Part shown: positions 22,882-64,000 of the stretch, piece by piece
How the letters are laid out: each line of letters begins with the position of its first letter
How positions within the stretch are numbered: position 1 is the first letter of the stretch
DNA from: Macrostomum lignano
Taxonomy: Eukaryota
Assembly: GCA_002269645.1 (NCBI GenBank)
Contig: NIVC01000812.1
Location: 51,327-115,326, forward strand
Direction: 5' to 3'
Length of the DNA stretch: 64,000 nucleotides
Position numbers and translations under genes: made by a program
Notes under the pieces: model-generated
Database searches by the model: none
What the model saw: only the letters and a program-made list of their open reading frames with translations
Told to the model about the DNA's origin: nothing

Positions 22882-23640
22882 TTAGAACACGGACAGGCAC
22901 TCGCAAAGGTATTTCCGGTTGCTAGAGCATCCGTAATCATCGACGCCGATCTTGTGATTGGCGTAGACAGCCGCACAGCCCTGAATCGGCAACCCACTGC
23001 TCGGCCTCTCGGGCTCCCAGACGTCGGCCCGGATGCTCTCGTTGCAGGCGTCCCAGATCCAGCCTTCCGTCTTGGTCGCAGAGCCCGGAATCTGGTGGCC
23101 ACCCAGGTACAAACTCTCTACAGGAATGTTCGAGACGCTCTTGATCCACATCAGGTGACGGGACTCGTCGGAGTCCAGAGCGTCCGCGAACTTCGACAGT
23201 CCGGCCTCCTGTCCGCACCGGGAGAGAGCGTCAGCCCAATTAGTCACAGGTTCGGCCGACACCTTGTATGAGGATCCGAACTGAGAGTACTCGTATCCGG
23301 GTCGGCACAGGCGACCCGGAGCTACTCCAGGTAGCGATCTCACGTACACGGTTACTCGGTGAGTGCAGTTGGCCTCTGACTGCACTCGGTGGCTGCACTT
23401 GTCGAACAGGAACAGCTTGCAGAGGCAGTCGCCATCCGGCAGAGAGAAGGCCCGGCAGTTCGGCATCTTGGCGCAGTGCAGGCTGCAGGACTGCGGATCG
23501 CACGAGCCCCACACGGTGTGGGTGAAGCTGGACGTCACGCAGTCAGCGCCAGAGATCGAGTGGAAAGTCGCTTTCGGAGAGTCGCAAGTTGCACCGCAAC
23601 TAATTTTGAGACCCAGAAGCAGAAACAGCAACGGTCGCAT
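22882..23640 (-). CDS. Secreted PAN/Apple-like + C-type lectin domain protein, paralog 1 (252 aa, intronless)
   Basis: Signal peptide MRPLLFLLLGLKISCG; PAN-like CSLHCAKMPNCRAFSLPDGDCLCKLF; CTLD hallmarks CRPGY, WADALSRC, LYLGG, GWIW, WEPERP, GCAAV, DDYGC, YLCE. Confidence 0.88.
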   Translation of the reverse strand: MRPLLFLLLGLKISCGATCDSPKATFHSISGADCVTSSFTHTVWGSCDPQSCSLHCAKMPNCRAFSLPDGDCLCKLFLFDKCSHRVQSEANCTHRVTVYVRSLPGVAPGRLCRPGYEYSQFGSSYKVSAEPVTNWADALSRCGQEAGLSKFADALDSDESRHLMWIKSVSNIPVESLYLGGHQIPGSATKTEGWIWDACNESIRADVWEPERPSSGLPIQGCAAVYANHKIGVDDYGCSSNRKYLCECLSVF

Positions 23641-31349: not shown

Positions 31350-32113
31350 TTAGAACACGGACAGGCACTCGCAGAGGTACTTCCAGTTGCTAGAGCATCC
31401 GAAATCATCGATGCCGATCTTGTGATTGGCGTGGACAGCCGCGCAGCCCTGATCCAGCAATCCTTTGTTCGGCCTCTCGGGCTCCTAAACGTCGGTCCGG
31501 ATGCTCTCGTTGCAGGCGTCCCAGATCCAGCCTTCCGTCTTGGTCGCAGAGCCCGGAATCTGGTGGCCACCCAGAAATAAAGTCTTTACAGGGCTGTTCG
31601 ACACGTTCTTGATCCACATCAGGTGACGCGACTCGTCGGAGTCCAGAGCGTCCGCGAACTTCGACAGTCCGGCCTCCTGTCCGCACCGGGAGAGAGCGTC
31701 AGCCCAATTGGTCGCAGGTGAAGCCGACACCTTGTATGAGGATCCGAACTGAGAGTACTCGTATCCGGGTGGGCACAGGCGACCCGGAGCTACTCCAGGT
31801 AGCGATCTCACGTACACGGTTACTCGGTGAGTGCAGTTGGCCACTGACTGCACTCGGTGGCTGCACTTGTCGAACAGGAACAGCTTGCAGAGGCAGTCGC
31901 CATCCGGCAGCGAGAAGGCCCGGCAGTTCGGCATCTTGGCGCAGTGCAGGCTGCAGGACTGCGGATCGCACGAGCCCCACACGGTGTGGGTGAAGCTGGA
32001 CACGTCACGCAGTCAGCGCCAGAGATCGGGTGGAAAGTCGCTTTCAGAGAGTCGCAAGTTGCACCGCAACTAATTTTGAGACACAGAAGCAGAAACAGCA
32101 GTGGTCGCAGCAT
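31350..32113 (-). pseudogene. PAN + C-type lectin paralog 2, pseudogene
   Basis: Near-identical to paralogs 1 and 3, but has a 2-bp insertion at about 32001 (frameshift) and a TGG>TAG nonsense change at 31485-31487. Confidence 0.9.
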
Positions 32114-37135: not shown

Positions 37136-37897
37136 TTAGAACACGGACAGGCACTCGCAGAGGTACTTCCAGCTTTTAGAGCATTGGGCATCATCGACGC
37201 CGATCTTGTGATTTGCATGGACAGCCGCGCAGCCCTGATCCGGCAATCCTTTGTTCGGCCTCTCGGGCTCCCAGACGTCGGTCCGGATGCTCTCGTTGCA
37301 GGCGTCCCAGATCCAGCCTTCCGTCTTGGTCGCAGAGCCCGGGATCTGGTGGCCACCCAGAAACAAACTCTCTACAGGGCTGTTCGACACGTTCTTGATC
37401 CACATCAGGTGACGCGACTCGTCGGAGTCCAGAGCGTCCGCGAACTTTGATAGTCCGGCCTCCTGTCCGCACCGGGAGAGAGCGTCAGTCCAATTAGTCA
37501 CCGGTGAGGCCGACACCTTGTATGAGGATCCGAACTGAGAGTGCTTGTATCCGGGTGGGCACAGGCGACCCGGAGCTACTCCAGGTAGCGATCTCACGTA
37601 CACGGTCACTCGGTGAGTGCAGTTGGCCACTGACTGCACTCGGTGGCTGCACTTGTCGAACAGGAACAGCTTGCAGAGGCAGTCGCCATCCGGCAGCGAG
37701 AAGGCCCGGCAGTTCGGCATCTTGGCGCAGTGCAGGCTGCAGGACTGCGGATCGCACGAGCCCCACACGGTGTGGGTGAAGCTGGACGTCACGCAGTCAG
37801 CGCCAGAGATCGGGTGGAAAGTCGCTTTCGGAGAGTCGCAAGTTGCACCGCAACTAATTTTGAGACCCAGAAGCAGAAAGAGCAGCGGTCGCAGCAT
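37136..37897 (-). CDS. Secreted PAN + C-type lectin protein, paralog 3 (253 aa from ATG 37897)
   Basis: Intact frame MLRPLLFLLLGLKISCG...YLCECLSVF with the same architecture as paralog 1. Confidence 0.88.
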   Translation of the reverse strand: MLRPLLFLLLGLKISCGATCDSPKATFHPISGADCVTSSFTHTVWGSCDPQSCSLHCAKMPNCRAFSLPDGDCLCKLFLFDKCSHRVQSVANCTHRVTVYVRSLPGVAPGRLCPPGYKHSQFGSSYKVSASPVTNWTDALSRCGQEAGLSKFADALDSDESRHLMWIKNVSNSPVESLFLGGHQIPGSATKTEGWIWDACNESIRTDVWEPERPNKGLPDQGCAAVHANHKIGVDDAQCSKSWKYLCECLSVF

Positions 37898-39420
37898 TTT
37901 TTGTCTACAGAGTGTGGTAAGTTTGAGAACGTTATTCGACGACATTTGAGTATACCTTTTACAGTAAATTCAAAGTTAGATCTGGGTATTAACTTTCCCG
38001 AGCATCAACTCACCTGCCAAGCAATGTTCCGGTCAGGGAACTCAACGCAGGAGTTGTGTTCTTTTCAGGAAGTTAATGAGACTTGAAAATCGAGAATGTT
38101 TGCATAACACAAGTTAGCACTGAGTCTAAAACCGTGCTCATCATCCAGAGTTTTACGCCATCCTACTAGTATCACACTTGCATTTGTCCCCAAAGCTAAA
38201 ATAAAATGGCTGATGCAAAAGCCTGTATTGGCCAAGCCAGCCCCACAAGATACAGCCGATGCAGGCATCTCAGCCTTGGCTTTCTCTGCTCAGCACCATT
38301 GCATTTTCCTTCATCACTAATGCATCTGGAATTTTCAGCCAGTTAGCCCTGGAATCGGACGGGTGAATATCGCCACAGCGCTTCGTTTCGCTAGACGTGC
38401 TGTATCGCTTCTCTCGGCTTGGCCTCTGTTTTGTCAAAGACTGCTCGCCACGGGCAAACAACTTCCAACCCTCGACGATCGATAGCAAGGGCTCTTCCCT
38501 TCCTACCCCTCAGTCATTGGGCCCACTCTATTGCTGCCTTTTGCCTAGTGGGACACGGATTGCTAACCATTTTGATGTAACCACGCTCTGGTCGCGGGAT
38601 AGGGCATGGGAACTTTTTCGAAAGTGCCTCCTATCCCGTGCACCCTCTGCACAGAGCTGTCGAGACTCGGCCAGGTCTCCGCCCAGGCCTGGAGACTCCC
38701 GCTCTGCTGCCCCCCTCCTACTGCCTTTGTTCCGTCTCCCCTGCCGCCACACCTGCCTTTCCGGAACTCCCTGTCCCTCTCTGTACCCTCCCCTCTACCT
38801 TATCTCCCCTGCACTCCACCCTATTCTTCTTGTACTTTCCCTTTCCCCCCCTCTTTTTGTCTCTCTCTGCACTCTTTTCCTGCGCTGTCCCCTCCTTCTC
38901 TGTGTCTACTTACAGTATTTTGTGTGCTCACCGTCTCCCCATCCCCTCCCAAACTCCCAAACGGTGACGCAAGTCGTGTGACCCCTTCTTCCCCCCGATG
39001 ACTCATCGATGACTCATCTCCCTCTCTTGCGCAACCTTTTCTCATGCCATTGTTCTCCTCCCCAAATTTCTCATGCGACACCCACCCCACCTCCGCTTCT
39101 ATTGTTCTCGTTTTTGATTCTTTTGTTCTCTCGACCCCACCAATTATCACATTTTCTCCGATTTTCTCTTTCTTTTGTTCTCGTTTTCGCACCTAATTAT
39201 CACCTTTTCTCCAATGTTTACTTTTCCATTGTTCTCAGTTTTCCCCAATTATCCCCGATTTCCAATTCCTTTGTTCTCGACCCCAGCCCTATTGTTCTCA
39301 ATGTTTGCTTGCGCAACACTTTCGCGACCACCCGCTGCGCCAATTATCCCCCACCCCACCTCCGGATTGCGCAATTTCCCTATTTCTCATGTTGCTATGC
39401 CGGTCTCATGCTTCTCATCA

Positions 39421-41653: not shown

Positions 41654-43894
41654 TCAATGGTTTCCTGGCTGGGACTTAAACTTATTGGGAGCCAGGAGGC
41701 TCCGTAAATTTCGTTGCCGTGTAAATGCGGGCAGTATGCGGGAGCCTGCTTTATTTTGTAGCTTCTCAAAGTTTTTAGCCATCTCGTTGGCAAGCCAGAC
41801 CGTAGATGGGTGAAAAGGAAGGACCAGAGGGATGGGTCGGAGAAGATGATTGTCGACCCTGATTTTTGTACCTGGCGGTTTGTCAGTCCCCGGTTTTTTA
41901 ATCCAGATTTCTTCCCTTAGTTCGATTTTGTTGTTATTAAGAACTTGTTCGATAGCAATGGAGACAAAGTTTGCAATCGAGTGATTGGGGGTGAGAAAAT
42001 GCTCTGATCCCGAAGTAACGACTCTCCTGTTAATATTTGACCTGTGCTGGTTCATTCTATCTCTCATTGATCTTCTAGTCATACCTACATAGAGGATTTT
42101 CCCAGGGTGGCACTGGTTGCAGTAGAAGCCATATATGATGCTCTTGGAGCCACAGGACAGGCTCTGAGAGATTAAAAAACCGGAAGCCGGTTTCAGCCCC
42201 TGGGCGGAGAGAGCAGGCGGTGAGTGGGTGCAGCATTTGCAGCGGGATGACCCACAGGGATGGAACCCTTTGGGAAGCAGACCCAGATTGGTCGTTGGTC
42301 CTGCAGTCCAGTTCATGAGTATGAGGACCTTCTTTTTGCAGTTTTTAAGAAAAATATTCAAGCAGCCTAAATGCTTGAGTTCCGATTTTAAAGAATTGAA
42401 AGCATCGTTGAAAGACTTGTAGTCATCACAGATACGAGCGTACCGAAGGATTTGGGATTTTACTACCCCCTTGAAGGTGTGTGACGGATGGAAGGACTGT
42501 CGGTGCAACAATCTATGGGTGTATGTTTCTTTTGAAAACAGTTGTGTTGTGAAGCGGTTTTCAGCTTTCCTGATGGTCATGTCAAGGAAACTGACCTCAG
42601 TTGATGAGGAGCTGACGGTGAGTTTGATGTTGGGGTTGATTGAATTTAGGTGTACAACAAATTCTGTCAGAGCTTCAGCCGGGTGGTCCCAGTGAATGAA
42701 GATATCATCTATGTACCTAAAATAGATGTTCGGCTTATAAAGAGCAGTTCTCAGGGCAGTTTCCTCCCAGAGGCTCATGAAGAGACAGGCATAGCTGGGC
42801 GCAAATATGCGCCCCATGGCTGTACCTCTAAGTTGTAGGAAAATCATTTTGTCAAATTCAAAGTCATTCCTGTACAAACACAATTCCAGTAGCTTTATTA
42901 TTTCAGCATCCGGTCTAATGGGATCCGGGTATCGGTTAAAGAATTCCTGGATCGCTGCAATGCCCTGATCTATTGGGATCATGGAGTACAGACTCTGGAC
43001 ATCACAGGTTGCCAGAGTCGAACCTTCCGTGCAGCTTTTATCCATAAGGTGTGCCTTGAAGTCATAGGAGTCCTTAATGAAAGTGGGTTGCGCTTGGGCA
43101 ATCGGTTTTAGAAAGAAGTCTATGTACTTTTCTGCCCCAATTGCTTCAGAACTGCATCCGCTAACAATAGGTCTGCCTGCTGGGACCCGAAAGGGGATCA
43201 GCCAGGTGGCCGGGTCCTTGTGAATTTTTGGGAGCAGGTAGAAATGCCGGGGACGGAAGTTCTCTCCGGGACAAAGAAATGCACACTGTTTCTTAGATAT
43301 GAACTTTCTGTTACATAAATTGAGGAAGATCCCCCTGATAAGTTCCGCAGTCTCGGGTTGCAATGGCTGGTCCAGCTGTTGATAGGCATCAGTGTCAAAC
43401 AGTTGGTTGTAGGCTGCAAATTCGTAATCCTTGGGGTGCATGATGACCACTGCGTTGCCTTTGTCCGCCTTTTTTATAAGGACGGAGCTGTTTCGCTTGA
43501 GCCTCTGAATCGCCCTGGTCTCTGCAGGTGCCTCTAGGTTGCCTTTGATCTGTACCGTTGTCAAATTCTCTACCAGATTTTGGTTCTCAAGTACCAACAA
43601 GTTGCAATCATCCCTTCTGAGTCTGAGGGGAACCTCCTTCACTGATTTCCCGGTGAAGGGGGGCGGGCTGGTGTTGGCGAGACCCCTCTTTTTGAAAAAG
43701 TCTTTCCAGAAAAGTTTACGATGAAATTCCGTCATGCAGTTCCTCAACTCATCGAAATCAAGGGCTTGGGTTGGGATAAAATTGAGTCCCCTATCTAGCA
43801 GCCTCGTCTCAGACTCGGAGAGTTTGAAGGTAGGGTGTAGATTTAAAATGTTGCCTTCCAGTTTGGGAGGCCTACAGTAGTCAGCTAGTTTAAA
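41654..43894 (-). CDS. PLE reverse transcriptase + GIY-YIG endonuclease (ORF2)
   Basis: Frame is open from 43927; ILNLHPTFKLSESETRLLDRGLNFIPT (PLE N-terminal motif), KKADKG, YLLPKIHK, GRPIVS, DVQSLY, GTAMG, YFRYIDD, Cys linker CGSSRCKCC, IIYGFYCNQC..LYVGMTRRSMRDRMNQH. No ATG until 43737. Confidence 0.93.
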   Translation of the reverse strand, partial: FKLADYCRPPKLEGNILNLHPTFKLSESETRLLDRGLNFIPTQALDFDELRNCMTEFHRKLFWKDFFKKRGLANTSPPPFTGKSVKEVPLRLRRDDCNLLVLENQNLVENLTTVQIKGNLEAPAETRAIQRLKRNSSVLIKKADKGNAVVIMHPKDYEFAAYNQLFDTDAYQQLDQPLQPETAELIRGIFLNLCNRKFISKKQCAFLCPGENFRPRHFYLLPKIHKDPATWLIPFRVPAGRPIVSGCSSEAIGAEKYIDFFLKPIAQAQPTFIKDSYDFKAHLMDKSCTEGSTLATCDVQSLYSMIPIDQGIAAIQEFFNRYPDPIRPDAEIIKLLELCLYRNDFEFDKMIFLQLRGTAMGRIFAPSYACLFMSLWEETALRTALYKPNIYFRYIDDIFIHWDHPAEALTEFVVHLNSINPNIKLTVSSSSTEVSFLDMTIRKAENRFTTQLFSKETYTHRLLHRQSFHPSHTFKGVVKSQILRYARICDDYKSFNDAFNSLKSELKHLGCLNIFLKNCKKKVLILMNWTAGPTTNLGLLPKGFHPCGSSRCKCCTHSPPALSAQGLKPASGFLISQSLSCGSKSIIYGFYCNQCHPGKILYVGMTRRSMRDRMNQHRSNINRRVVTSGSEHFLTPNHSIANFVSIAIEQVLNNNKIELREEIWIKKPGTDKPPGTKIRVDNHLLRPIPLVLPFHPSTVWLANEMAKNFEKLQNKAGSRILPAFTRQRNLRSLLAPNKFKSQPGNH

Positions 43895-44730
43895 GTTCTC
43901 AGCCAGGAAGCCAGCGCCAGTATAAAGTCAGGCGCTGAGAAGGATACAATTGGTTTAAGAGGAGGAGAGGCAATAAGAGTAACAGGTGAGAGTTTCTTAC
44001 TCAGAGATTGAGTCAATTCTTCACCGCTGGCAAAGGGCGGAACCAGAAGAATCTTACGTGTCAGACTGTCCGCTCTCAGTAGATCGATAGCCTCAGAGAG
44101 CGACTCTCGCCAGTGGTCTGTGCTGAGCAGCTCGTCCGGCAGGACCAGCACCGTTGACTGAGCGCATTGCCGGTTCCGCAGGGCAGCCGACCTCAGTAGA
44201 GATGGTAAGGCTGACAGTGAGTACTCATGTACCTCTGTGATTGCCGGCAGTTTGAGGCCCTCGAAAGGCTTTGGGCAGAGTACCAGGTTCCGGCAGTCCC
44301 TGCTGATGATGAGCGAAACAGGTTGCTCAAAGGTGCTGGGTGAGTCATTCAGATGCGGCCTGTGGCGTTCCGGACCACCAGGGGAGTCTTCAGAGTCCGG
44401 CGATGGTAAGCGGCGTTTGGCAGGTGAAGCAGGCAGTCCCACCCGTGGAAGAGGCGGGGTCACAAAAAGGTCGTCAGCTGCCGACGTACAGCCGTTCTCA
44501 GGTGAGGCGACTTCGGTGGTCCCGCCTGCCGCCGGACTGCCGTCCGAAGCCGCAACCGCAGCCGCTGAGGGGTCGTTGCAGATCGTCGCATCGGCGCTCG
44601 CTGCCACGTCCCCGATGGTCGTCGCGCCGCCGTCCACTACCGAGTCGGCGTTGGTCTCCGTGCTCGTGCTTGCCGTGGGCTCATTGCTAGATGCTGCGAT
44701 TTTCTTTTTTTTTCCACTTTTTTTCTCCAT
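43885..44730 (-). CDS. PLE upstream ORF1 (281 aa from ATG 44730): basic/disordered N-half, possible degenerate SGNH-like C-half
   Basis: Open frame ending TAG at 43887-43885 and overlapping ORF2; fold call is tentative. Confidence 0.65.
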   Translation of the reverse strand: MEKKSGKKKKIAASSNEPTASTSTETNADSVVDGGATTIGDVAASADATICNDPSAAAVAASDGSPAAGGTTEVASPENGCTSAADDLFVTPPLPRVGLPASPAKRRLPSPDSEDSPGGPERHRPHLNDSPSTFEQPVSLIISRDCRNLVLCPKPFEGLKLPAITEVHEYSLSALPSLLRSAALRNRQCAQSTVLVLPDELLSTDHWRESLSEAIDLLRADSLTRKILLVPPFASGEELTQSLSKKLSPVTLIASPPLKPIVSFSAPDFILALASWLRTLN

Positions 44731-44924
44731 CTTTAAAAGTCTTTCTTGGAAGTAAATTGCTTTTTGCACTTTTCGGGTCAGCGTTGCTGATTTGGCCGTT
44801 GGTTTGAGAGGAGCAACCGCTTCGTTGTACGTCGTAAATAAGTAGTTGTCATGAGGAAAAAGCCAGGACAGAAATCAACTAAATCCCCTGAGATCAACAT
44901 CTACTAAAATCTATCTAAACATAA

Positions 44925-52922: not shown

Positions 52923-55900
52923 TTATGAGCTATGAAAATTGTTTTTAAAACCAATTAATGCTAAACAAAAAGCGCCTACCTGAGCATCCAATAAAGTCGA
53001 GACCAGCCTACTCAGATGAGCAGCCGTGATTCTCTTCCTACGCCTGTCGAAAACTCCCATTAGCTGTTCATTGCTGATGCTGTGCTGCAGGCAGTAATGC
53101 AGCAACAGCCCCAGATCCTGGGGATCGCCGTAGTCCCAAGAAAATGTGTTGAAGAGTTCAGCTGCTTTTTCATTGCCATTCGGTTGTTTTCGAATGAACT
53201 CGAGGCGGAGCGCCTTGGACAGCGCGTCGAAATTGATGTAGCTCGCCTGGTCGCGACTTCCCCGACTCAGTGGAAAAATCTCTCTCAGATAGGCTGGAAG
53301 AAACTTGAACTCGACTTTCTTGTGAAATCGGAAATAGAATTTCCAAGCTGAGTCGTTGGTCTGAAGATAACGGAGGACGTCCTCCACCGAGCTCGGGATG
53401 GACTTGCTGACGGTGCTGACCGGGGCGACGAGTGAATAGCCGCTTTTGCCAGTCCTCATGAGCGCCATCGCTCTGAGGCACTCTCGAGCAGTTCTGGCCC
53501 AATCAGGTATGCTGTTGATTTCCTCTTTGATGGTCTTTTCAAAGTTGTCATCAGCCAGCGACAAGAGGACATACTTGATAACATCGTAGGTATCGTGGTA
53601 CTGCAGCTCAGCTGTAGGAAATGACCGCTCTTCCAGCACGGGCAGTAGAAGAAACGGGTGAAACTGGAACTCCATAGAAGGATTTTTGCAGAGTCCTTGT
53701 CGAAATTCTTCCAGTGCAGTAGAAAGATTGCAAATAACTTCTTCAATGGCTCTTCGGATTTCCGACTTGGGGTGGTGATTGCGGTGCAGATAAACAAATG
53801 CATCTCGCAGGAAAAAGTGTTGCATGCACTGATGCGGTGAACAGAAGTCAGTTCTTGTGTTGTGAAAACCTCTTTTAAGCAGAAGCTCCAACGATCGTCT
53901 CACCAGCTCATGAAGACTCTCTTTAGTCCAGTGTTCTCTTGGCGTCCCGTCGAGCATAAAGAAGAAAGTGTTCTTGGCGTGGTACGTTTTCAGTCCATTC
54001 ACTTTAGCGGAAATTACTTTTTTGATAATGTATTTCAGCAGCACGAAAACCTGGCCCTGCTCGTCGGTTAGGCTCTGCATGAGCCGCCTCTCAAGCAGGT
54101 TGGTGCTGACTCGCATTCGTTTGCCACTCAGCCCTGGCGGCGCTGCGGCAACCAAATGGCATGGCGAGTTTTTCAGCTCGTCCGCGAGCGATTTCAGAAT
54201 GTTGGACGGAATGCACGACTGATAGCCAGACTGCAGCACAGCGATCGTGGGATACTCACTGAGTGGATACGCAGTCACAAAGTCCATATTCGGTCGAAGC
54301 ATTGATCCATTTTGAGTGACACTTGGCTCAGAAACTGGAACGGAAGTAACAGGGTGCATGATGATAATGATCGATTGTTTGTAAATTAGACCGGTTACTC
54401 CTACCTGAGATATCAATCTCGATGTGCCCGTCGCTATAGCTATGTTCGGAGCAGACTTTCACTACAGGGCCTTGCTGTAGCGCTGTCATATCGATGTCTG
54501 AATCCGGGTCCAGCTTTCCATCGTTTTGCGTAAAGCACATGCCCCATCCATCAGAGAAGCTACCAACGATGGAGAACTGATCAGAAGGCAGCCTTTGCTT
54601 TTGGATGAATTCTAGGGTGGCCGCAATCCTGCTTTGCATTGCGGCGTTCGCTGCTGTGAAACCGGCAAGCCTCATTTCGGAGCTCAAAGATTCGCAAGAA
54701 TCCATCAGGCTCGTGTCTGAGCTGTCAGATGCAGAGATACTGCTCGGCAAGGCACTCATGGCAAGAGCTGTCAACCAAGGCTCTATGGTTGCCTGCGACT
54801 GGATCAACAACTTCGCAACCTTAGTGTGGCCGTTCTCCAGTGCAACAAGCAATGGAGATTCTTTCCGGCGGTTTCGCTGGTTCAAGTTTGCTCCGGCCTG
54901 AACCAGACTTGCGACGACAGCGATATGACCATTCCTAGCGGCAATCATGAGAGGTGATCCTTTTTTTGTCTGGACATCAACATCCGCCTGAGCCCCAATC
55001 AGTTTCTCAATCACCCGAATGTGACCTCCCTTTGCTGCTGCGAACATTGGCGACGATAGCGGCTTCGGCCAAAGAGAGTTGCCGCAGGCCCCGGCACGAA
55101 TCAGACTGACGGTGGCGTCTACGCGGCCCTTACTGGTCGCTAAGCAAAGCGGGGAGTCGCCCGCTCTGGTCAGGCTGTCGATATTGGCTCCGGCTGCGAC
55201 AAGCAGATCGACAAGGTTGGCTTGAGAGTTCTGTGCCGCTGCATGCAGGGGACTGAAGCCCTTGCAATCGGCCAGGTTAATGTTGGCGTTGGATGCTAGC
55301 AGCTTGCGTACAACGTCGAGTTTGCCATTCTTGGCAGCCACTAAAAGCGCCGTTGCTCCCAATTTAGTCTGGTGGTCAATTTTAACTCCTGCCTGCAAGA
55401 GCTCAGTAATCACGGCTGTGTGCCCGTGACGGGCCGCTATGATGAGCGGCGTGCAGCCGTCCTTGTCCCCGAGATCTATGTTGGCTCCATGTTTAATGAG
55501 CGCTTGCGCAGACTCGACACGTCCTGACTGGGCTGTTGCATGCAAGGCTGCACGACCTTTGTTAGTCTGGAAGTTCAGGTCCGTTCCCGACTCAGCTAAT
55601 AAGGAAATCACTTCCGCGTGTCCGTGCTGAGCAGCGATGTACAAAGGCGTTGCGTTTGAGCAGCGGAGCTGAAGATCAACATTCGCTCCGGATCTTATTA
55701 GAAATCGAACAAACTCCAGGAGACCTCTCTTAGCGGCGAGGTGAAGCGGTAATGCGTACAGCTCGTTCCGCTTTTGCGCTTCCAAAAGCACTCCACCAAG
55801 GCAGTCGGTCAGTTCCATTCTGCCACACAAAGCCGCAATTTGAATCGCTGCAAATCCGTTGTCCTTTGCTGTTGTGAAATCCGCGCCCATCGATAAGAGC

Positions 55901-56364
55901 AGATTCAGTATCTCTCGGTGGCCCCTGAGCATGGCCAGTTCAGTCAGGGTGAGTCGCATTTGACTTAAAATGCGCTTCTCCTGCTCACTCGGTGTCTTCG
56001 CTAGTCTTGAAGCCGCGGCCAGCACCCAGAGAGCTGGAGAGCCGGTGCTGCAAAAATGAACATCGGCGCCAGCGCGAATCAGCACCTCGACGGCGTCCAA
56101 CTGGTCGCAGAAGACGGCAACAAACAGCGGCGAGCCGACCTTCTTGTCAGAAGGACAGTCGAGCCCGACGCCGTGCTTAAGCAGCAGCCGCACAGCAGGA
56201 GCGCAGAATGCCGCTGCCACATGCAGCGGTCGGCTTCCATCGGGATCTTCAGCATCAGCAGAACGGGGCTGGACAGTAAGCAGCCTCTCTGCTGCTTTCA
56301 GGTCACCGTCTCGTAATGCCAATTTGAGCTCTGCCCTGTTCGATTCGCAGTACATTTCTGTCAC
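52923..56364 (-). CDS. Ankyrin-repeat + cGAS/Mab21-like nucleotidyltransferase (cGLR-like), about 1120 aa
   Basis: Roughly 14 ankyrin repeats (G.TPLH.AA..G type), then IVGSFSDGWG...DSDIDM. A 70-bp GT-AG phase-1 intron (54404-54335) joins in frame to NMDFVTA, CHLV, MRVS..LLERRLMQSL, LLKYIIK, LKTYHAKNTFFF..P.EHW. Possible extra intron 52979-52861 and last exon 52860-52771. Confidence 0.85.
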
Positions 56365-57135: not shown

Positions 57136-59478
57136 CCTGCGTGTACCTGGCAGAGGAAATACGCTCGTAAGCACTGCACCCATGTAGTGTGCACGTATTT
57201 CCCGTATTCAATACAAAAGGCAGTGTGTATTCAAGTCTTCTGCAGCTGATAGTGGTTGAAACTTTTTTCACACAAACAGACAAAAAACTCGATAGAGGGC
57301 TCAACGTAACGGATCTTCCGCACAATTTATACACTAAAACGACAGTAGATAAGGCAATTGGTCACCCTTAAATCAAATGATCTGTCAAAATCTAACGAAA
57401 CTAGGCACTATGCATACACTTACAGGCTGGCTCTGCTTCAAATCAAACGAGATCAAAGTCCCAGCGACTACACGGGGTGCACAAAACTGCCGTTTTTATC
57501 CTGTCTGAAGTTGAGACCTTCGACAGAACGATGAACTGGAACCCAAGAAGTGACAAGTCAACGCGATTCCCAAGTGGGTTATCCAGCTGAGAAGCTTCTT
57601 TGACCTCACCAAGCATCGCGACTGCTCCTGCCGAGCCACAAATAGCCACAAAATCAATATTCTAAAGCAGGCTATATAGCTCGTAGCTTGTAAAGATCTC
57701 ACCGACAAGTGTCTTTAATACTCAGCAGTAATAGTACTCTGCAGTCTTACATTTGATTTGGACAAAATTTTTGCTGCGAGCCAGTCTGCACAAGTCGGTG
57801 TGGCTGTGGGTCAGCTTAATGCTAGGACTAGATAGTCTCTCTACCTTACAAAAGGAACTGTAATATAGAGAAGGCACTCCAAGTAAGAAGCTTGTTACGA
57901 TTCAACAATGAGGAAAAAAATCTGGTGACTCCAAGAAGTTCCGTTGTAAACTTCCTGTCGACCTGTCGTCGTTGGAGATTGTCTACTCAGGTCTGAGATT
58001 ACGTATTTAATGCAAGTACAAGAGTGAGCAAGGGCGAGCGAGCAAAGGGAGGAAAGCGAAGAAAGGCGCAGCTTCTTGCTTGTGTTGTGAGCCCCCGTCC
58101 TCCGGAGCAACGCCTACAGCTTTAACCTGTCGGGAAGCTGCGACCCCCACGTCCCCAGTCAGAGCTCCCGTCCCGCGCCCTAGGGAGAAGCAGAAAAAGG
58201 ACAGTAACTCGCGAACACGAACTTACACACCGTAGCCGATGCAGTTCGCCGTGCACTTTTTATGGTAGATCGACGAGTCGTTTAGTCAATAGCCAACGGA
58301 GGCGGACCAACGCGCGCAAGGGAGGAGTCTGCCCTCCAGACAGCGACTATATTTTTCATTGGTCCTACGCGTACATGAATATAACTTAAGAACAAATGTA
58401 CGGTACAGCAGGGGAGGTGGGGCGGGGTGGCGTGATCGGCGTACGCGTTGATTATTGATTGGAGGGTTGGGGCAGACTGGAGGGTTGGGGCGGGGCAGGA
58501 GGGCGAGAAAGGGCACGATTGCACAACACTTGGTTTGATAAGGGTTTGTATGTCATTTTCTCAGTCTTTCGCATTAAAGGATGCTGTCATAGTAAATTAC
58601 AGCCAATACTCTACAGCTTTTGCTAGTTTGAGCATATCCATCAGTTATTAATACATTCAAAGCTGAATAGAAACTTTAGGGCCGAAAGTACATCACTTCA
58701 TTACAGTCCAACTGAATGCTTGCGCCTGACAGAAGTAGCCGAATGCCTAGGCGATTAATAATTGGATTGTTTTCGGTCTCCCTGGCAGTCATTTTTCGAA
58801 GCTCAAGGTCAAATATGTATCCCGAACAGCTGAATTCGTTGGTTGAGAGTTCAAACACACAAGTAATGAAATAATTTAAAAAGCTGTCTCTTTCAGTATA
58901 TGCGAGCGATTCACACATTCGCACTGCTTTAACTCTTCATTAACTAAGTCTCTACGAGGCTGAATTCCTACTCAATTGTTAACGCCAGCTGAAGAAGTTA
59001 AAAAACACAAAGAACTGGTTCTTGGCTATCGCGAGTTGCGAGAGACATATAGAAGATCATAGCTGACATTGTCTTTATTCTAGCCAACCACTCTTCGTCC
59101 TGGCCTGATAAACACCTTACTCTGTGAAAGAAGAAAATTAATTTGGATTACATTTAGCTAAAAGAGAGTTGGCCAAAACTGACTTTAATCCTGAAAACTT
59201 TATGATTTTGCAGAGCGATTGTTAACTAGTACCTAAAACAAATAGACTAAATTTTATCTGCCGAATCAAGACACGATGGCTATTAAGAAAAAATACTCGT
59301 ATGTCCTTGAAAAATGGAAATAAGAATTGAACAGCAGTAACATTAACTGTAGCATCCTCTACAGATCAAATATTAGGACTTCTATTGAAATAAATAAAAC
59401 CGAAACCGAAATGGGGATTCAAAAAAAAGCCCGAGTAAAAACAGACGCAATTGGCAAATATTGTGGGATTTCTGAAAT

Positions 59479-60540
59479 TCACGAATTGCTGCAAGCTTCG
59501 ATGCTCTTAGCGTTGCCTCCGATCCTGATCCTTCTCGACATGCTCTTGGCGTTGCCTCCGATCCTGATCCTTCTCGACATGCTCTTGGCGATGCCTCCGA
59601 TCCTGATCCTTCTCGAAATGCTCTTGGCGTTGCCTCCGATCCTGATCCTTCTCGACATGCTCTTGGCGTTGCCTCCGATCCTGATCCTTCTCGACATGCT
59701 CTTGGCGTTGCCTCCGATCCTGATCCGTCTCGACATGCTCTTGGCGTTGCCTCCGATCCTGATCCTTCTAGACATGCTCTTGGCGTTGCCTCCGATCCTG
59801 ATCCGTCTCGACAAGCTCTTGGCGTTGCCTCCGATCCTGATCCTTCTAGACATGCTCTTGGCGTTGCCTCCGATCCTGATCCGTCTCGACATGCTCTTGG
59901 CGTTGCCTCCGATCCTGATCCGTCTCGACATGCTCTTGGCGTTGCCTCCGATCCTGATCCGTCTCGACATGCTCTTGGCGTTGCCTCCGATCCTGATCCG
60001 TCTCGACATGCTCTTGGCGTTGCCTCCGATCCTGATCCTTCTCGACATGCTCTTGGCGTTGCCTCCGATCCTGATCCTTCTCGACATGCTCTTGGCGTTG
60101 CCTCCGATCCTGATCCTTCTAGACATGCTCTTGGCGTTGCCTCCGATCCTGATCCTTCTCGACATGCTCTTGGCGTTGCCTCCGATCCTGATCCTTCTCG
60201 ACATGCTCTTGGCGTTGCCTCCGATCCTGATCCGTCTCGACATGCTCTTGGCGTTGCCTCCGATCCTGATCCTTCTAGACATGCTCTTGGCGTTGCCTCC
60301 GATCCTGATCCTTCTCGACATGCTCTTGGCGTTGCCTCCGATCCTGATCCTTCTCGACATGCTCTTGGCGTTGCCTCCGATCCTGATCCGTCTCGACAAG
60401 CTCTTGGCGTTGCCTCCGTACCGGATCCATCTAGATGGTGGGTACCTGATTATTATTCTATTCGCACTGCTGACTTCCTCGCAGTCGACTGAAGCACAAA
60501 TGATGCAGCAGGCGATGGCGGCCAGCAAAGAGCATAGCAT
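59479..60540 (-). CDS. Secreted repetitive peptide precursor (353 aa): signal peptide + 23 copies of RR-IRIGGNAKSMS
   Basis: ATG in CCCGCCATG context; MLCSLLAAIACCIICASVDC signal; 39-bp units whose common variants (AGG/CGG, TCG/TCT) are synonymous in this frame; TATAAAA at 60642-60636. Confidence 0.8.
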   Translation of the reverse strand: MLCSLLAAIACCIICASVDCEEVSSANRIIIRYPPSRWIRYGGNAKSLSRRIRIGGNAKSMSRRIRIGGNAKSMSRRIRIGGNAKSMSRRIRIGGNAKSMSRRIRIGGNAKSMSRRIRIGGNAKSMSRRIRIGGNAKSMSRRIRIGGNAKSMSRRIRIGGNAKSMSRRIRIGGNAKSMSRRIRIGGNAKSMSRRIRIGGNAKSMSRRIRIGGNAKSMSRRIRIGGNAKSMSRRIRIGGNAKSLSRRIRIGGNAKSMSRRIRIGGNAKSMSRRIRIGGNAKSMSRRIRIGGNAKSMSRRIRIGGNAKSISRRIRIGGIAKSMSRRIRIGGNAKSMSRRIRIGGNAKSIEACSNS

Positions 60541-60957
60541 GGCGGGCTGTCTGAGTACCATTACGGAGTTGGAGAATGCGGTTGGAGATTTTCTGGGAGT
60601 GTAGAGTGGCGATTTGTTGTGGAGAGCTAGCTGCTTTTTATAGTATTTAAATGCCAAGGAGAAATATTTTATCACCTGCTGTTTATTGGCGTCACAATAT
60701 TTGACGCAGTAACAATTAGCGTGGTAATGAAAGATTTTTGACAAAAGTTAAACATAAACTTTGCTGTTCTTAGCTAAAAATGGTCAATGCCATCGAGTGC
60801 AAACAGTTTTCGTCATTCAACTCTATTGCGTAATTTTCAATGCTAGCTGATGCAAAATAAGCTAGTTTTTAGCGAGGCTTTGACAGAAATGAAATTTTGA
60901 AGATAATAGAGAGAGTATTTGTTTACTAGACGGAGCCCTTCGATCAGAGACGAATCC

Positions 60958-61068
60958 AGTTTGGCGCCATCGGCATTCCGTTTGGCGCCATCGGCATTCC
61001 GTTTGGCGCCATCGGCATTCAGTTTGGCGCCATCGGCATTCCGTTTGGCGCCATCGGCATTCCGTTTG
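60958..61068. repeat. 21-bp tandem repeat, 5 copies
   Basis: Unit TTTGGCGCCATCGGCATTCCG. Confidence 0.92.
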
Positions 61069-62001
61069 GAGTGACTTAACGAAATTCTGCGCTTATAATC
61101 CAAAAAAATTTACACCTTCCCGATCAATTTGGGGAAGACTGAAGCATGACGGCATGAACAGATATCCAGGGGCTTCTAGCTGGGCACACGCATACCTTTG
61201 GAGATCGAGTCACACTGACCAGGTAATTCGTGTTTGAAGAATTCCAATAAGTGCAGTCTCGAATTAAACGCAGTTCTTTGTTCGGGGAAGAAGGCTGGAA
61301 GCAGACATTGGGATGTGGCTTGGACCCTTGGGAACAAACTAAGGTTGAAATGCCTCATCATTGAATATTGGAAATGAGACAGGCTTCTTCAGACTTCCAG
61401 ATGGATGTTACGAGCTAAAATGGATTGCCGCTCTTCAACAAAAACAATTTTCGAATTCCTTTTCGAAAAAATCGGACAAAATCATTCCGTGACAAACCGC
61501 TATTCCTGGGTCGTAACTTTAAAAAGCCTGCATTTTTTCCATTAGAACTGTTTTTTTTAGTTTAAATTGGCAAAATTGTAAATCAATTTCCAATGAAACA
61601 CAGCGGGTGAGAAACATAAAATCCGTTAGCTGTGGTATTTTATGCGGTAGTTGACTGGCACCGCGTGTTTATTAATGTTTCCATCATTAAAAAGCTTATT
61701 AATTAAAAGCTGATAAGCCGCTTAAAATTGCTTGAAATTGCTTTAAATTAATAGAACTGATTGCAGAGCATTGAAAACCGACTAAAAAGTTTAGTGAGAG
61801 CTGCTGTCAGCTGATCATTATAACAAATTACATGTATAGGGCTAAATGTTCGACTAATCAGAAGATATTCAGCGGATTTAATGGCACGGTGCCCACATGC
61901 AGGCAGCTGATCAGCTACCGGGCCCGGATTAGCGCTGCTGGTTTCGCATAGGAAGCGAGCAGTCTTTTCTTGTTATTACTATTAGTAGGATTCGTTAGCG
62001 A

Positions 62002-63930
62002 TCAGTCCAGGACCTTCTCCATCTGCGGGTTCTTCATGTTGCCGCGGCAGGCCGTCACCGGAATCAGCGGATGCTGCGTGGTCTTCAGGTAGTCCTGTGG
62101 TTCGAAATGGACCAGGTGTCTAGTAGAGAGCCTCATCGTGGGTGCAGATTAGCTCAGCGGGTAATGCATACTATAACTCTCTGAATTTGAACTCCAAAGG
62201 CACAGCCCCCCCACCGCACAAACTAACGTGATAAAGTTATCTCAAACTCGAGCAATCACTCACATGAGCATACTGCAGCGCGTTCATCTTCTCAGCGTCC
62301 GAGGCCCTGGCGCCGACGTATACGAAAATTTCCACGCCCGTGTCGATGATGTACACATCCTGGACGGGCGAACGGTCAAGTATGTGATGATCTGCAACCA
62401 ATACTACTCATAAAGTAGCTGAGAACTAAAGTTACGCTTACATCCTCATTGATCATAGACCTGGGGCAGTTGCCTTCGGAGACCAGCGAGTACTGCAGCT
62501 TGCCCGACTCGTCCGACAGCCTATGGGTAAGATGAGACGGTGAGATGAGTGAGATAGAGAGAGAATGGTGAGAGCGCGGGACTGAAGCCCGTGTGGAGGA
62601 TGGGGTGGGTGCGGGACTGAAACCTGTGCGGAGGATGGGGTGGGGCGGGACTGAAACCTGTGCGGAGGATGGGGTGGGTGCGGGACTGAAACCGTGCGGA
62701 GGATGGGGTGGGTGCGGGACTGAAACCTGTGCGGAGGATGGGTGGGTGCGGAATGAAACCGTGCGAAGGATGGGGTGGGTGCGGACTGAAACCCGTGCGA
62801 AGGATGGGGTGGGTGCGGGACTGAAACCCGTGCGGAGGATGGGGGGGTGCGGGACTGAAACCTGTGCGGAGGATGGGGTGGGTGCAAGACAGGCCAGCAT
62901 CAGCCAACAGATGCGCACCTGAACATGGCCTTCTTGCCGCTGCGCACATCGCTTTTCACCTCCGAGGATTTCTTGGCGTAGGGCACGTCCGGCAGGCTCT
63001 GGTAGAACTTGTGCTCGGAGCCGATGCTGTTCTCATCCAGGGTGAAAGTCTGCGTCTTGCCGTGGCGCTCGTTCTCAGCTGCTGCAGGAAAGCGCGCGGC
63101 CTTGATGCGCTCGTCCTTGTTGCAGGTTTTGCCGTTCCACTGGTAGGCGGTGCGGCCGAGGTCCAGGATGAAAACGTCATTGGAGTTGAGAGCTTTCCTG
63201 GTCAGCTTGACCTCCTTGACCTCAATGTTGCGCCGGACTCCACAGAAGTGCAGCAGTCGGGGCTTGTACTCCTCAGGCTTCACCTGCCGAAAGCCGGTGG
63301 CGCAGCCGCCCTTGAGATAACTTTCCGGCGCAGCGAGAGGTTGGGAAAGTGGATTTTTAATCTAGCAAAAATGGAAGAAAGACTACAGTAAACTGAGAAT
63401 CTAGCCTGACATGGATGTAGGAATAGAATGGATTGCTAATCTGGCCTACATCAATGCAGAACAGAATGGATTACTAATCTAGCCACTCGCTTACGTGATG
63501 GTCTTGAAGTAGGACTTGAACATCGAGGACTCGTGCTCCTGAACCTCGCGATGCTGCACGGCCTTGTCGTCCAGGAAGGTGTCCAGCTCCACGGTCTTGT
63601 AGGCGGCCGTGCCGTACTCGTCCTGATTGAGGATATTCAAAGATTTAAGCTTAATACAACGCTAATTACTAGTGCTACATCTAGTGCTCAAAAGCTCCCG
63701 CACCTGAGTGCTGTGCCTTTCCAATCCAGAAGTGCACATCGTAGAGCAGCTCATCACCGTCGGGGTCCTTGTACACATTGAGCACGATGTAGGAGTCGCC
63801 GCTGAAGAACTTGCCGTATCCTCCTTGGGCCAGGCCTTTACTTTGAACTTCTCGATGCGCCACACGAAGAGCTCGTCGCTGGTGCACTCCTTCACCGGCT
63901 GCCAGGCCGTCTCGACCTCGGACGCGGCCT
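62002..63930 (-). CDS. Gelsolin/severin/fragmin-family actin-binding protein (three-domain type), 5' exon(s) beyond the window
   Basis: Exons 63930-63704 ([30 protein letters not shown]), 63622-63495 ([25 protein letters not shown]), 63320-62919 ([24 protein letters not shown]), 62520-62442, 62359-62264 (DVYIID), 62094-62002 (stop). Splice sites and phases are consistent; two compensating indel pairs. Confidence 0.92.
62575..62885. repeat. ~35-bp G-rich intronic minisatellite
   Basis: Unit GAGGATGGGGTGGGTGCGGGACTGAAACCTGTGCG, about 9 noisy copies. Confidence 0.92.
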
Positions 63931-64000
63931 CTGCGGGCAAAATTAGTCCAAGTCAGTTTTTGTCTGACTTGCGTCAACTTCCGACCTTGTGGACTTTCGA

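What the first reader, a model, noticed from the sequence alone, without database searches (positions are those of the whole stretch)
59479..60540. Tandem repeat that is really a prohormone-like or antimicrobial peptide precursor
Seen: signal peptide, short spacer, one variant unit (RWIRYGGNAK), then 23 units separated by dibasic RR, predicting IRIGGNAKSMS peptides. The recurrent differences between units (AGG/CGG Arg, TCG/TCT Ser) are synonymous in this frame, whereas the Arg variant changes Leu/Arg in the plus-strand ORF, consistent with coding constraint on the minus strand. TATA box about 100 nt upstream. No C-terminal Gly-Lys/Arg amidation signal. Inference: an unrecognised neuropeptide, or a cationic (+4 per uncleaved unit) secreted defence or adhesion polypeptide.
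Basis: partly seen in the sequence, partly recalled or inferred. Interest (0 to 1): 0.7.

Follow-up and report, generated by a model that had tools for sequence, protein, structure and literature searches.

The report
Secreted cationic repeat-protein gene candidate
A 39-base tandem repeat in a flatworm genome sits inside what looks like a real small gene for a secreted, extremely basic protein made of 24 copies of a 13-residue unit. Nothing shows that it is expressed or that it is a neuropeptide or antimicrobial precursor.

Summary
In detail: 24 in-register 39-bp units (window 59497-60432, minus strand) lie in a 353/360-codon ORF with a hydrophobic N-terminus, 23 RR sites and a TATAAAAA box upstream.

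The window holds about 25 other minisatellites, and five of the six frames of this unit are open. The two frequent variants are synonymous in a second frame as well.

The flanks carry the case for a gene:
- The N-terminus is the most hydrophobic of all 352 ATG-ORFs of at least 60 codons in the window.
- A TATA box lies 74-81 nt upstream of the first ATG.
- Codon usage fits this frame.
- One relative exists among 1.84 billion representative proteins (P0053). It keeps the frame, the first ATG and the identical RRIRIGGNAKSMS unit. Its signal-peptide core has diverged heavily (10 of 22 residues plus a one-codon indel) yet stays uncharged, which about 2% of random-substitution simulations achieve.

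Best reading (about 0.5): a lineage-restricted gene for a secreted polycationic repeat protein (about 37 kDa, net charge +93), possibly cut at RR/RRIR sites. A neuropeptide identity is unsupported: no amidation signal, no acidic spacers, 360 aa, no family match. A non-coding minisatellite with chance gene-like flanks remains at about 0.3. No transcript evidence was obtainable.

The parts
60635..60642 (-). TATAAAAA box, 74-81 nt upstream of the first ATG. A YYANWYY-type initiator-like CCACTCT lies about 35 nt downstream of it (around 60607).
   Evidence: Sequence read. TATA[AT]A[AT][AG] occurs only 13 times on both strands of the 64 kb window, 0.10 per kb per strand. The transcription start site is inferred, not shown.
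60562..60607 (-). Inferred 5' UTR. It contains a pyrimidine tract plus AG (ctctacactcccAG, AG at 60594-60593) that the P0053 gene model used as a splice acceptor. It could also be a trans-splice acceptor.
   Evidence: KSPTAFSNS, encoded here, is identical in P0053. The function is inferred.
60559..60561 (-). First in-frame ATG (MVLRQPA...), conserved in the relative P0053, with G at -3 and G at +4.
60538..60540 (-). It is not conserved: Ile in P0053.
60490..60561 (-). Predicted signal peptide MVLRQPAMLCSLLAAIACCIICAS: an n-region with Arg, a 16-residue uncharged h-region, and a small-residue cleavage site after A23 or S24.
   Evidence: Highest 12-residue hydrophobicity (Kyte-Doolittle 2.98) of all 352 ATG-ORFs of at least 60 codons in the window. 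The h-region of P0053 differs at 10 of 22 residues plus a one-codon indel, yet stays free of charged, Pro and stop residues. This happened in 2.2% of random-substitution simulations. SignalP was not available.
60433..60489 (-). Non-repeat spacer VDCEEVSSANRIIIRYPPS. It holds the only acidic residues apart from the tail and one of the two Cys of the mature protein.
   Evidence: The region is about 90% identical in P0053, and DCEE is conserved.
60394..60432 (-). Variant first unit RWIRYGGNAKSLS.
   Evidence: P0053 has RWIRIGGNAKSMS.
59536..60393 (-). 22 full 39-bp units encoding RRIRIGGNAKSMS: 19 identical peptides plus one each of M>L, M>I and N>I. Each unit begins with RR inside an RRIR (R-X-X-R) motif.
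59497..59535 (-). Last, diverged unit RRIRIGGNAKSIE.
59479..59496 (-). C-terminal tail ACSNS with the second Cys, then the TGA stop. No AATAAA follows within about 280 nt downstream.
   Evidence: In P0053 the tail reads ACQFVKF..., a 2-nt indel relative to the window.

Best explanation
This is a lineage-restricted (orphan) flatworm gene whose coding region is mostly an expanded 39-bp minisatellite.

Inferred steps:
1. Transcription starts about 30-35 nt downstream of the TATA box, on the minus strand.
2. Translation starts at the ATG at 60561.
3. The first 23-24 residues act as a cleaved signal peptide that takes the chain into the ER.

The mature product is about 336 aa and 37 kDa, with pI about 12 and 97 basic against 4 acidic residues. 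It has one Cys near each end and consists of 24 units of RRIRIGGNAKSMS.

I think it most likely acts outside the cell as a polycation that binds anionic mucus, glycans or microbial and substrate surfaces. Its 23 RR/RRIR motifs match the dibasic and R-X-X-R convertase consensus. Partial or complete cutting into 9-13-residue non-amidated cationic peptides (IGGNAKSMS or IRIGGNAKSMS) is therefore about as likely as not.

What is shown: the anatomy, the statistical rarity of the flanking signals, codon fit, and one conserved relative. What is inferred: transcription, secretion, cleavage and function.
For: - The signal-peptide-like start ranks first among 352 ATG-ORFs of at least 60 codons in the window. 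Among about 50 array-spanning open frames in the window, no other reaches its hydrophobicity score (2.98); the nearest are this array's own plus-strand frame (2.53) and a 22-bp array frame (2.17).
- A TATA box lies at the right distance, against a background of 0.10 per kb per strand.
- Codon log-likelihood is +3.3 bits per unit in this frame and GC3 is 85%, against 66% in the window's real exons. Four of the other frames score negative.
- The flanks are unique in the window, so this is not a transposable-element copy. The locus is intergenic, 1.4 kb downstream of the stop of a 3-domain gelsolin-like gene.
- One strong relative was found among 1.84 billion representatives: P0053, E = 6.6e-248. 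It has a gelsolin exon-3 fragment upstream, the same frame, the same first ATG and the identical repeat peptide.
- The h-region has diverged significantly faster than its flanks: 10 of 22 residues against 6 of 47, Fisher P = 0.005. It stays hydrophobic (simulation 1.3-2.2%), and the indel is one whole codon. This is how signal peptides evolve.
- Both Cys of the mature protein are conserved.
Against: - No transcript, cDNA or peptide evidence could be obtained. No exact product is on record.
- The genome makes minisatellites everywhere, about 25 arrays in 64 kb, 13 of the TRF rows with a period divisible by 3.
- Five of six frames are open.
- Variant sites are 3 synonymous to 3 non-synonymous, and the two frequent ones are also silent in another frame.
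- The register-antisense plus frame scores as well on codon usage in the unit and better in the N-terminal flank (+7.4 against +2.2 bits).
- P0053 is a chimeric automatic gene model. After 24 in-frame units its array hops six times among the three open frames through 1-2-nt indels, and its C-terminus is frameshifted relative to the window. If real rather than assembly error, that argues against frame constraint.
- There is no canonical AATAAA downstream.
- Ile at P1' of both candidate cleavage sites is, from my memory of the dibasic-site literature, unfavourable for convertases.
Confidence: 0.5

Rival explanations
1. This is an ordinary non-coding minisatellite. The ORF exists only because the unit lacks stops, and the ATG, hydrophobic stretch and TATA box in the flank are coincidences, or the remains of a dead gene.
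For: - The window is saturated with minisatellites of similar copy number and identity.
- Five of six frames of the unit are open.
- There is no significant excess of synonymous variation.
- No homologues were found by two word-indexed searches, and no product is on record.
- The array of the only relative changes frame six times, and its C-terminus is shifted by 2 nt.
- The frame stays open for 61 codons upstream of the ATG, through the 'promoter', as a stop-poor sequence would.
Against: - The joint rarity of the flank signals: hydrophobic start ranked 1 of 352, TATA expected about 0.01-0.02 in such an interval.
- Codon fit in this frame.
- A localised burst of substitutions in the h-region that nevertheless keeps it uncharged, with a whole-codon indel.
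- Conservation of the first ATG and of both Cys.
Confidence: 0.3
2. This is a classical neuropeptide prohormone. It is made in neurons, cut at RR by PC2-type convertases into 23 copies of IRIGGNAKSMS, and these act on a receptor.
For: It has a signal peptide-like start and identical short peptides flanked by dibasic sites. These are two of the three operational criteria used for planarian prohormones (PMC2953531). Multi-copy precursors are well known in invertebrates (general knowledge).
Against: - It is 360 aa, against the <200 aa criterion.
- It has no Gly-basic amidation signal and no acidic spacer at all. A pI of 12 and net charge of +93 are atypical for prohormones.
- It has no similarity to any known peptide family: the only Pfam match is a sub-threshold low-complexity one, and one search found no related family.
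- Copies are 96% identical at the DNA level, and copy number appears to differ between the two loci. This points to recent minisatellite dynamics rather than an old signalling peptide.
- The peptide strings are absent from 8.3 million full-text papers.
Confidence: 0.1
3. The coding strand is the plus strand. The 425-codon ORF at 59327-60604 would encode repeats of DMLLALPPILILL.
For: The frame is open and its codon log-likelihood is as good as the minus frame in the unit (+3.0 bits) and better in the flank (+7.4 bits).
Against: - An antisense frame in codon register usually inherits a good codon score.
- The frequent A/C variant is Leu/Arg in this frame, placing charges in a hydrophobic repeat in 8 units.
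- I saw no TATA or other start context.
- The only related gene model uses the other strand.
- A 24-fold hydrophobic 13-mer resembles no protein type I know.
Confidence: 0.03
4. The ORF is an internal or alternative 3' exon of a larger gene, for instance spliced to the upstream gelsolin-like gene as in model P0053. The hydrophobic stretch would then be a transmembrane segment rather than a signal peptide.
For: A good acceptor-like site (pyrimidine tract plus AG at 60594-60593) precedes the ORF. The frame is open upstream of the ATG. The P0053 model joins gelsolin exon 3 to exactly this point.
Against: - The gelsolin-like gene has its own third-domain exons and a stop at about 62005.
- P0053 is visibly chimeric: it includes frame-shifted gelsolin sequence and an unrelated EF-hand protein at its end that is absent from the window.
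- A TATA box sits just upstream of the ORF.
Confidence: 0.05

Closest known systems
Multi-copy antimicrobial polyprecursors ('protein operons'): Drosophila Baramicin A, bee apidaecin
   Same: A signal peptide is followed by tandem copies of a short peptide separated by furin or dibasic sites (RXRR in BaraA; PMC8423362). Here 23 RR/RRIR sites separate identical 13-residue units.
   Different: There is no sequence similarity. BaraA has only three IM10-like repeats plus distinct domains, and its peptides are not strongly cationic. Here the 24 copies are near-identical at the DNA level and there are no other domains. Immune induction, cleavage and activity are untested.
Flatworm neuropeptide prohormones (planarian npp/spp/npy genes)
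   Same: A signal sequence and basic sites flanking short peptides (criteria in PMC2953531).
   Different: The product is longer than 200 aa. It has no amidation Gly, no acidic spacers, no family motif and an extreme pI.
Lys/Arg/Gly-rich repetitive regions of the flatworm adhesive protein Mlig-ap1
   Same: A secreted flatworm protein dominated by positively charged low-complexity repeats rich in G, R and K (PMC8621496). The protein here is 21% R, 13% G and 7% K.
   Different: Mlig-ap1 is a very large protein with a core of known protein- and carbohydrate-binding domains. Here there is no domain at all and no detectable homology. Adhesive-gland expression is untested.
Non-coding minisatellites of the same window
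   Same: The same size class (period 21-53 bp, 5-58 copies, 86-99% identity) and the same absence of indels.
   Different: Of about 50 array-spanning open frames, this one has by far the strongest signal-peptide-like start behind an upstream in-frame ATG, and I checked for a TATA box upstream only here.

Membership tests
Neuropeptide prohormone (operational definition of Collins et al. 2010, PMC2953531) | N-terminal signal sequence | tested here: met
   Heuristic only, since SignalP was not available. There is a 16-residue uncharged h-region after MVLRQPA, small residues at -1 and -3, and the highest hydrophobicity score of 352 ORFs.
Neuropeptide prohormone (operational definition of Collins et al. 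2010, PMC2953531) | Basic cleavage sites flanking the predicted peptides | tested here: met
   23 RR sites, each within RRIR. Actual cleavage was not tested.
Neuropeptide prohormone (operational definition of Collins et al. 2010, PMC2953531) | Precursor shorter than 200 aa | tested here: not met
   353 or 360 aa (criterion).
Neuropeptide prohormone (operational definition of Collins et al. 2010, PMC2953531) | cDNA-verified transcript, MS-detected peptides and neuronal expression | not testable with these tools
   No transcriptome or peptidome of the source organism is reachable. Exact-product look-ups were empty.
Known neuropeptide or other protein families (Pfam; 1.84 billion representatives) | Sequence similarity above a family threshold | tested here: not met
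   The only Pfam match is a sub-threshold low-complexity hit (22 bits against a 43-bit cut-off). Apart from P0053, the representative search gave only low-identity repeat noise.
Furin/dibasic-processed multi-copy antimicrobial peptide precursor (Baramicin/apidaecin type) | Signal peptide plus tandem peptide copies between convertase sites | tested here: met
   The comparison is from PMC8423362.
Furin/dibasic-processed multi-copy antimicrobial peptide precursor (Baramicin/apidaecin type) | Infection-induced expression, released peptides and antimicrobial activity | not testable with these tools
   These need experiments.
Non-coding minisatellite | Head-to-tail array of a 10-100-bp unit | tested here: met
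   39 bp x 23.9 copies, 96% identity.
Non-coding minisatellite | No gene signals or frame constraint around or within the array | tested here: inconclusive
   The flank signals and the conserved hydrophobic N-terminus argue against this. Within-array variation and the frame hops in P0053 do not.
Flatworm adhesive protein ap1-like | [quoted passage not shown] | tested here: not met
   No Pfam domain was found. The architecture is as described in PMC8621496.
Beta-solenoid repeat fold | Credible structure prediction matching solved solenoids | tested here: inconclusive
   Single-sequence AF2 gives strands with pLDDT 80-93 in the repeats. Foldseek finds nothing at E <= 0.001 and TM <= 0.35. AF2 is documented to give confident but unrealistic beta-solenoids for perfect repeats (PMC11795689).

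The most novel reading that the evidence does not exclude
A 39-bp minisatellite has been recruited as the body of a new flatworm gene. The gene is a 'protein operon' that delivers about 23 identical non-amidated cationic peptides (IGGNAKSMS or IRIGGNAKSMS) per translation event, as a new host-defence or signalling peptide family with no relatives outside a narrow lineage. Copy number would vary by ordinary minisatellite dynamics, so peptide dose could evolve quickly.
Probability: 0.15. Interest if true: 0.6.

Novelty: new member of a known kind. Interest (0 to 1): 0.35.

Why it matters
If the gene is real, it is a clean example of a secreted protein built almost entirely from a recently expanded minisatellite. 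It has no homologues beyond one related locus among 1.84 billion representative proteins.

Such orphan, repeat-born secretory genes are routinely missed or mangled by annotation. The only related model is a chimera of three genes. They are also candidates for lineage-specific functions in mucus, adhesion, defence or signalling in flatworms.

The case also has practical use. In a minisatellite-rich genome an open frame and 'synonymous' unit variants are not evidence for coding. The unique flanks, and how they evolve, are what discriminate.

Tried and rejected
- Exact-product look-ups for three start choices were empty.
- Two word-indexed homology searches found nothing, one with the full protein and one with an N-terminal alignment of window plus P0053.
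- No DNA is on record for P0053, so dN/dS and the real nature of its frame hops could not be examined.
- P0074 is a 216-bp-repeat ORF from an ENA metagenome contig that matched the N-terminus at 35-39% identity in 12 copies. I judged it a chance match inflated by repetition and dropped it.
- A metagenome DNA scan for the unit gave 0 hits.
- A full-text search for the peptide strings gave 0 papers.
- Rfam found nothing in the window.
- The synonymous-variant argument is rejected as non-discriminating.
- The AF2 beta-strand model is rejected as evidence of a fold.
- The transposable-element hypothesis for the flanks is rejected: there are no other copies in the window.
- The intron-of-gelsolin hypothesis is rejected: the gelsolin-like gene's third-domain exons and stop lie upstream, at about 62400-62005.
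- The organism could only be placed as a flatworm. The GLUT exon's best named hits are Protopolystoma, Trichobilharzia and Dicrocoelium at 49-52% identity, and neighbouring ORFs are not on record.

Full report
**1. What is there**

TRF reports 41 rows, about 25 distinct arrays, in the 64-kb window. One array lies at 59501-60432: period 39 bp, 23.9 copies, 96% matches and no indels.

On the minus strand the frame is open from 60744 to the TGA at 59479-59481. From the ATG at 60540 it reads:
- MLCSLLAAIACCIICASVDCEEVSSANRIIIRYPPS
- a variant unit, RWIRYGGNAKSLS
- 22 full units of RRIRIGGNAKSMS (19 identical peptides, plus one each of M>L, M>I and N>I)
- a diverged last unit, RRIRIGGNAKSIE
- the tail ACSNS*

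A second in-frame ATG lies 21 nt upstream at 60561 (MVLRQPA...). TATAAAAA lies at 60642-60635.

**2.

The ORF itself carries none. Five of the six frames of the consensus unit are stop-free, including all three on the minus strand. The window is full of minisatellites, about a third of them with periods divisible by three.

The synonymous-variant argument is weak. The two frequent variants, A/C at unit position 4 in 8 units and G/T at position 39 in 4 units, are silent in the proposed frame. They are equally silent in plus frame 0 (RHALGVASDPDPS). Interior variant sites split 3 synonymous to 3 non-synonymous against 21% synonymous expected, which my binomial estimate puts at P about 0.1.

The absence of indels is shared by most other arrays.

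**3. What does carry weight: the unique flanks**

- *Hydrophobic start.* I scored every ATG followed by at least 60 open codons on both strands, 352 in all. The two starts of this ORF have the highest N-terminal 12-residue hydrophobicity (2.98). This is above the clear signal peptides of three paralogous secreted Cys-rich ORFs in the window (2.29-2.53). Among about 50 array-spanning open frames in the window, no other reaches that score; the nearest are this array's own plus-strand frame (2.53) and a 22-bp array frame (2.17).
- *TATA box.* TATA[AT]A[AT][AG] occurs 0.10 times per kb per strand. Finding one 74-81 nt upstream of the first ATG has a chance expectation of about 0.01-0.02.
- *Codon usage.* Codon usage trained on 2144 codons of the window's recognisable exons (GC3 0.66) gives +3.3 bits per unit for the proposed frame, which has GC3 0.85 and mostly preferred codons. 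Four other frames score negative. The register-antisense plus frame scores +3.0 in the unit and higher in the flank, so this test excludes four frames but not that one.
- *Location.* The flanks have no other copy in the window. The locus is intergenic. A three-domain gelsolin/fragmin-like gene on the same strand ends with a stop at about 62005, 1.4 kb upstream. An ankyrin/Mab-21-like gene starts at about 56364.

**4. Relatives**

Word-indexed searches found nothing, and no exact product is on record.

The exhaustive phmmer search of 1.84 billion representatives gave one true relative, P0053: 1137 aa, E = 6.6e-248, UniParc UPI0007A11E81. The other 189 hits are low-identity repeat noise.

P0053 is a chimeric automatic gene model made of four parts:
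- a frame-shifted piece plus the end of gelsolin exon 3
- SKSPTAFSNSAMVLGQPILSCLLAVLACYIITTTADCEEVSNANRVIIRYPPSRWIRIGGNAKSMS
- 23 further perfect RRIRIGGNAKSMS units
- about 14 more units read through all three open frames, followed by an EF-hand protein that is absent from the window

P0053 therefore documents a second, partly syntenic locus. It may be a homeologue, a paralogue or a related species; I cannot tell which.

Informative points from the comparison:
- The first ATG (MVL) is conserved.
- The upstream KSPTAFSNS and the spacer are about 90% identical. The h-region differs at 10 of 22 residues, against 6 of 47 elsewhere (Fisher P = 0.005), and carries a one-codon indel.
- Despite that burst of change, the h-region contains no charged residue, Pro, Asn, Gln, His or stop. 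In 20,000 simulations of random nucleotide substitution to the same amino-acid divergence, only 2.2% stayed free of such residues and 1.3% kept the observed mean hydrophobicity. Fast but hydrophobicity-preserving change is what signal peptides do. This is the best evidence that the frame is translated.
- The repeat peptide is identical at both loci, and both Cys of the mature protein are kept.

Counter-evidence from the same protein:
- There are six frame changes by 1-2-nt indels in the distal array.
- A 2-nt indel lies three codons before the window's stop.

Without the DNA I cannot tell assembly error from real decay.

**5. The product and how it probably works**

With the ATG at 60561 the precursor is 360 aa. 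After removal of a 23-24-residue signal peptide the protein is about 336 aa and 37 kDa, with pI about 12 and 97 Lys+Arg against 4 Asp+Glu. It has two Cys, one near each end, and no recognisable domain.

There are 23 RR sites. Each lies inside RRIR, which is the minimal furin-type R-X-X-R motif (the motif knowledge is general).

I commit to a secretory polycationic repeat protein. Convertases may or may not cut it into IGGNAKSMS- or IRIGGNAKSMS-type peptides.

The features that argue against a classical neuropeptide are:
- no amidation signal
- no acidic spacers
- a length well above the <200 aa used operationally for planarian prohormones (PMC2953531)
- no family similarity

The closest analogies in how it might work are furin-separated tandem antimicrobial peptide precursors such as Baramicin A and apidaecin (PMC8423362), and the Gly/Arg/Lys-rich repeat regions of the flatworm adhesive protein Mlig-ap1 (PMC8621496). 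It is a member of neither.

The single-sequence AF2 model shows confident beta-strands in the repeats. It has no significant structural neighbour. AF2 is known to produce confident but unrealistic beta-solenoids for perfect repeats (PMC11795689), so I discount it.

**6. Organism**

The best named hits of a GLUT exon in the window are monogenean and trematode proteins at 49-52% identity. Other window contents fit an animal genome and specifically a flatworm: a Penelope-like element, a tnp2-type transposase, and gelsolin-like and ankyrin/Mab-21-like genes. The species was not identified.

**7. Verdict**

| Reading | Probability |
|---|---|
| Real gene for a secreted polycationic repeat protein or polyprotein | about 0.5 |
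| The same gene acting as a true neuropeptide precursor | about 0.1 |
| Non-coding minisatellite with fortuitous or decayed gene-like flanks | about 0.3 |
| Other gene structures or the other strand | less than 0.1 |

The decisive datum is strand-specific transcript evidence, and it was not obtainable here.

Novelty: a new, orphan member of a known kind (repeat-born secretory protein or multi-copy peptide precursor). Interest is moderate.

Noticed in passing
window 1-64000: Extreme minisatellite density: about 25 distinct arrays (periods 4-75 bp, up to 58 copies) in 64 kb. Several lie inside introns of real genes, for example the 37/75-bp array at 12331-14609 between sugar-transporter exons and the 34-bp array at 62576-62885 between gelsolin-like exons.
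   Followed up: partly
window 22882-23640, 31485-32113, 37136-37945 (minus): Three paralogous copies of an ORF for a secreted Cys-rich protein (MLRPLLFLLLGLKISCGATC...), about 250-270 aa with a clear signal peptide and no Pfam hit. The products are not on record. This looks like a tandemly duplicated orphan family.
   Followed up: partly
window 26625-29315 (plus): An intact 896-aa ORF with a tnp2-type (CACTA/En-Spm-like) transposase domain sits in an AT-rich island (GC 0.32 against about 0.5 around it). It may be a young DNA transposon.
   Followed up: no
window 41654-43747 (minus): A 697-aa ORF with weak, sub-threshold Pfam matches to reverse transcriptase plus a GIY-YIG endonuclease, the architecture of a Penelope-like retroelement. 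A 294-aa ORF lies just upstream at 43885-44769.
   Followed up: no
window 52923-56364 (minus): A 678-aa ankyrin-repeat ORF overlaps by about 90 nt, in another frame, a 497-aa ORF with a sub-threshold Mab-21-like domain match. This is probably one gene with a short intron or a frameshift.
   Followed up: no
window about 62005-63950 (minus): A three-domain gelsolin/fragmin-like gene in at least five exons, ending ...PQMEKVLD* at about 62005. Its exon-3 tail is what links the window to the chimeric model P0053.
   Followed up: partly
window 60959-61069: A 21-bp array (5.3 copies, 97% identity) lies about 320 bp upstream of the candidate gene's TATA box. It is open in five frames. Its relation to the gene, if any, is unknown.
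   Followed up: no
window 1752-4904 (minus): A 1050-aa GC-rich (0.67) ORF, Pro/Ser/Ala-rich with poly-Pro runs and two internal short-period arrays (2727-2796 and 2888-3046). It has no Pfam hit.
   Followed up: no
L004 6001-8616 (ENA metagenome contig ERZ25073751): An 871-aa ORF made of twelve 72-residue repeats resembles the candidate's N-terminus at 35-39% identity (VLRQ.A.LC...SNRR...G.NAK). I judged this a chance match inflated by repetition.
   Followed up: partly
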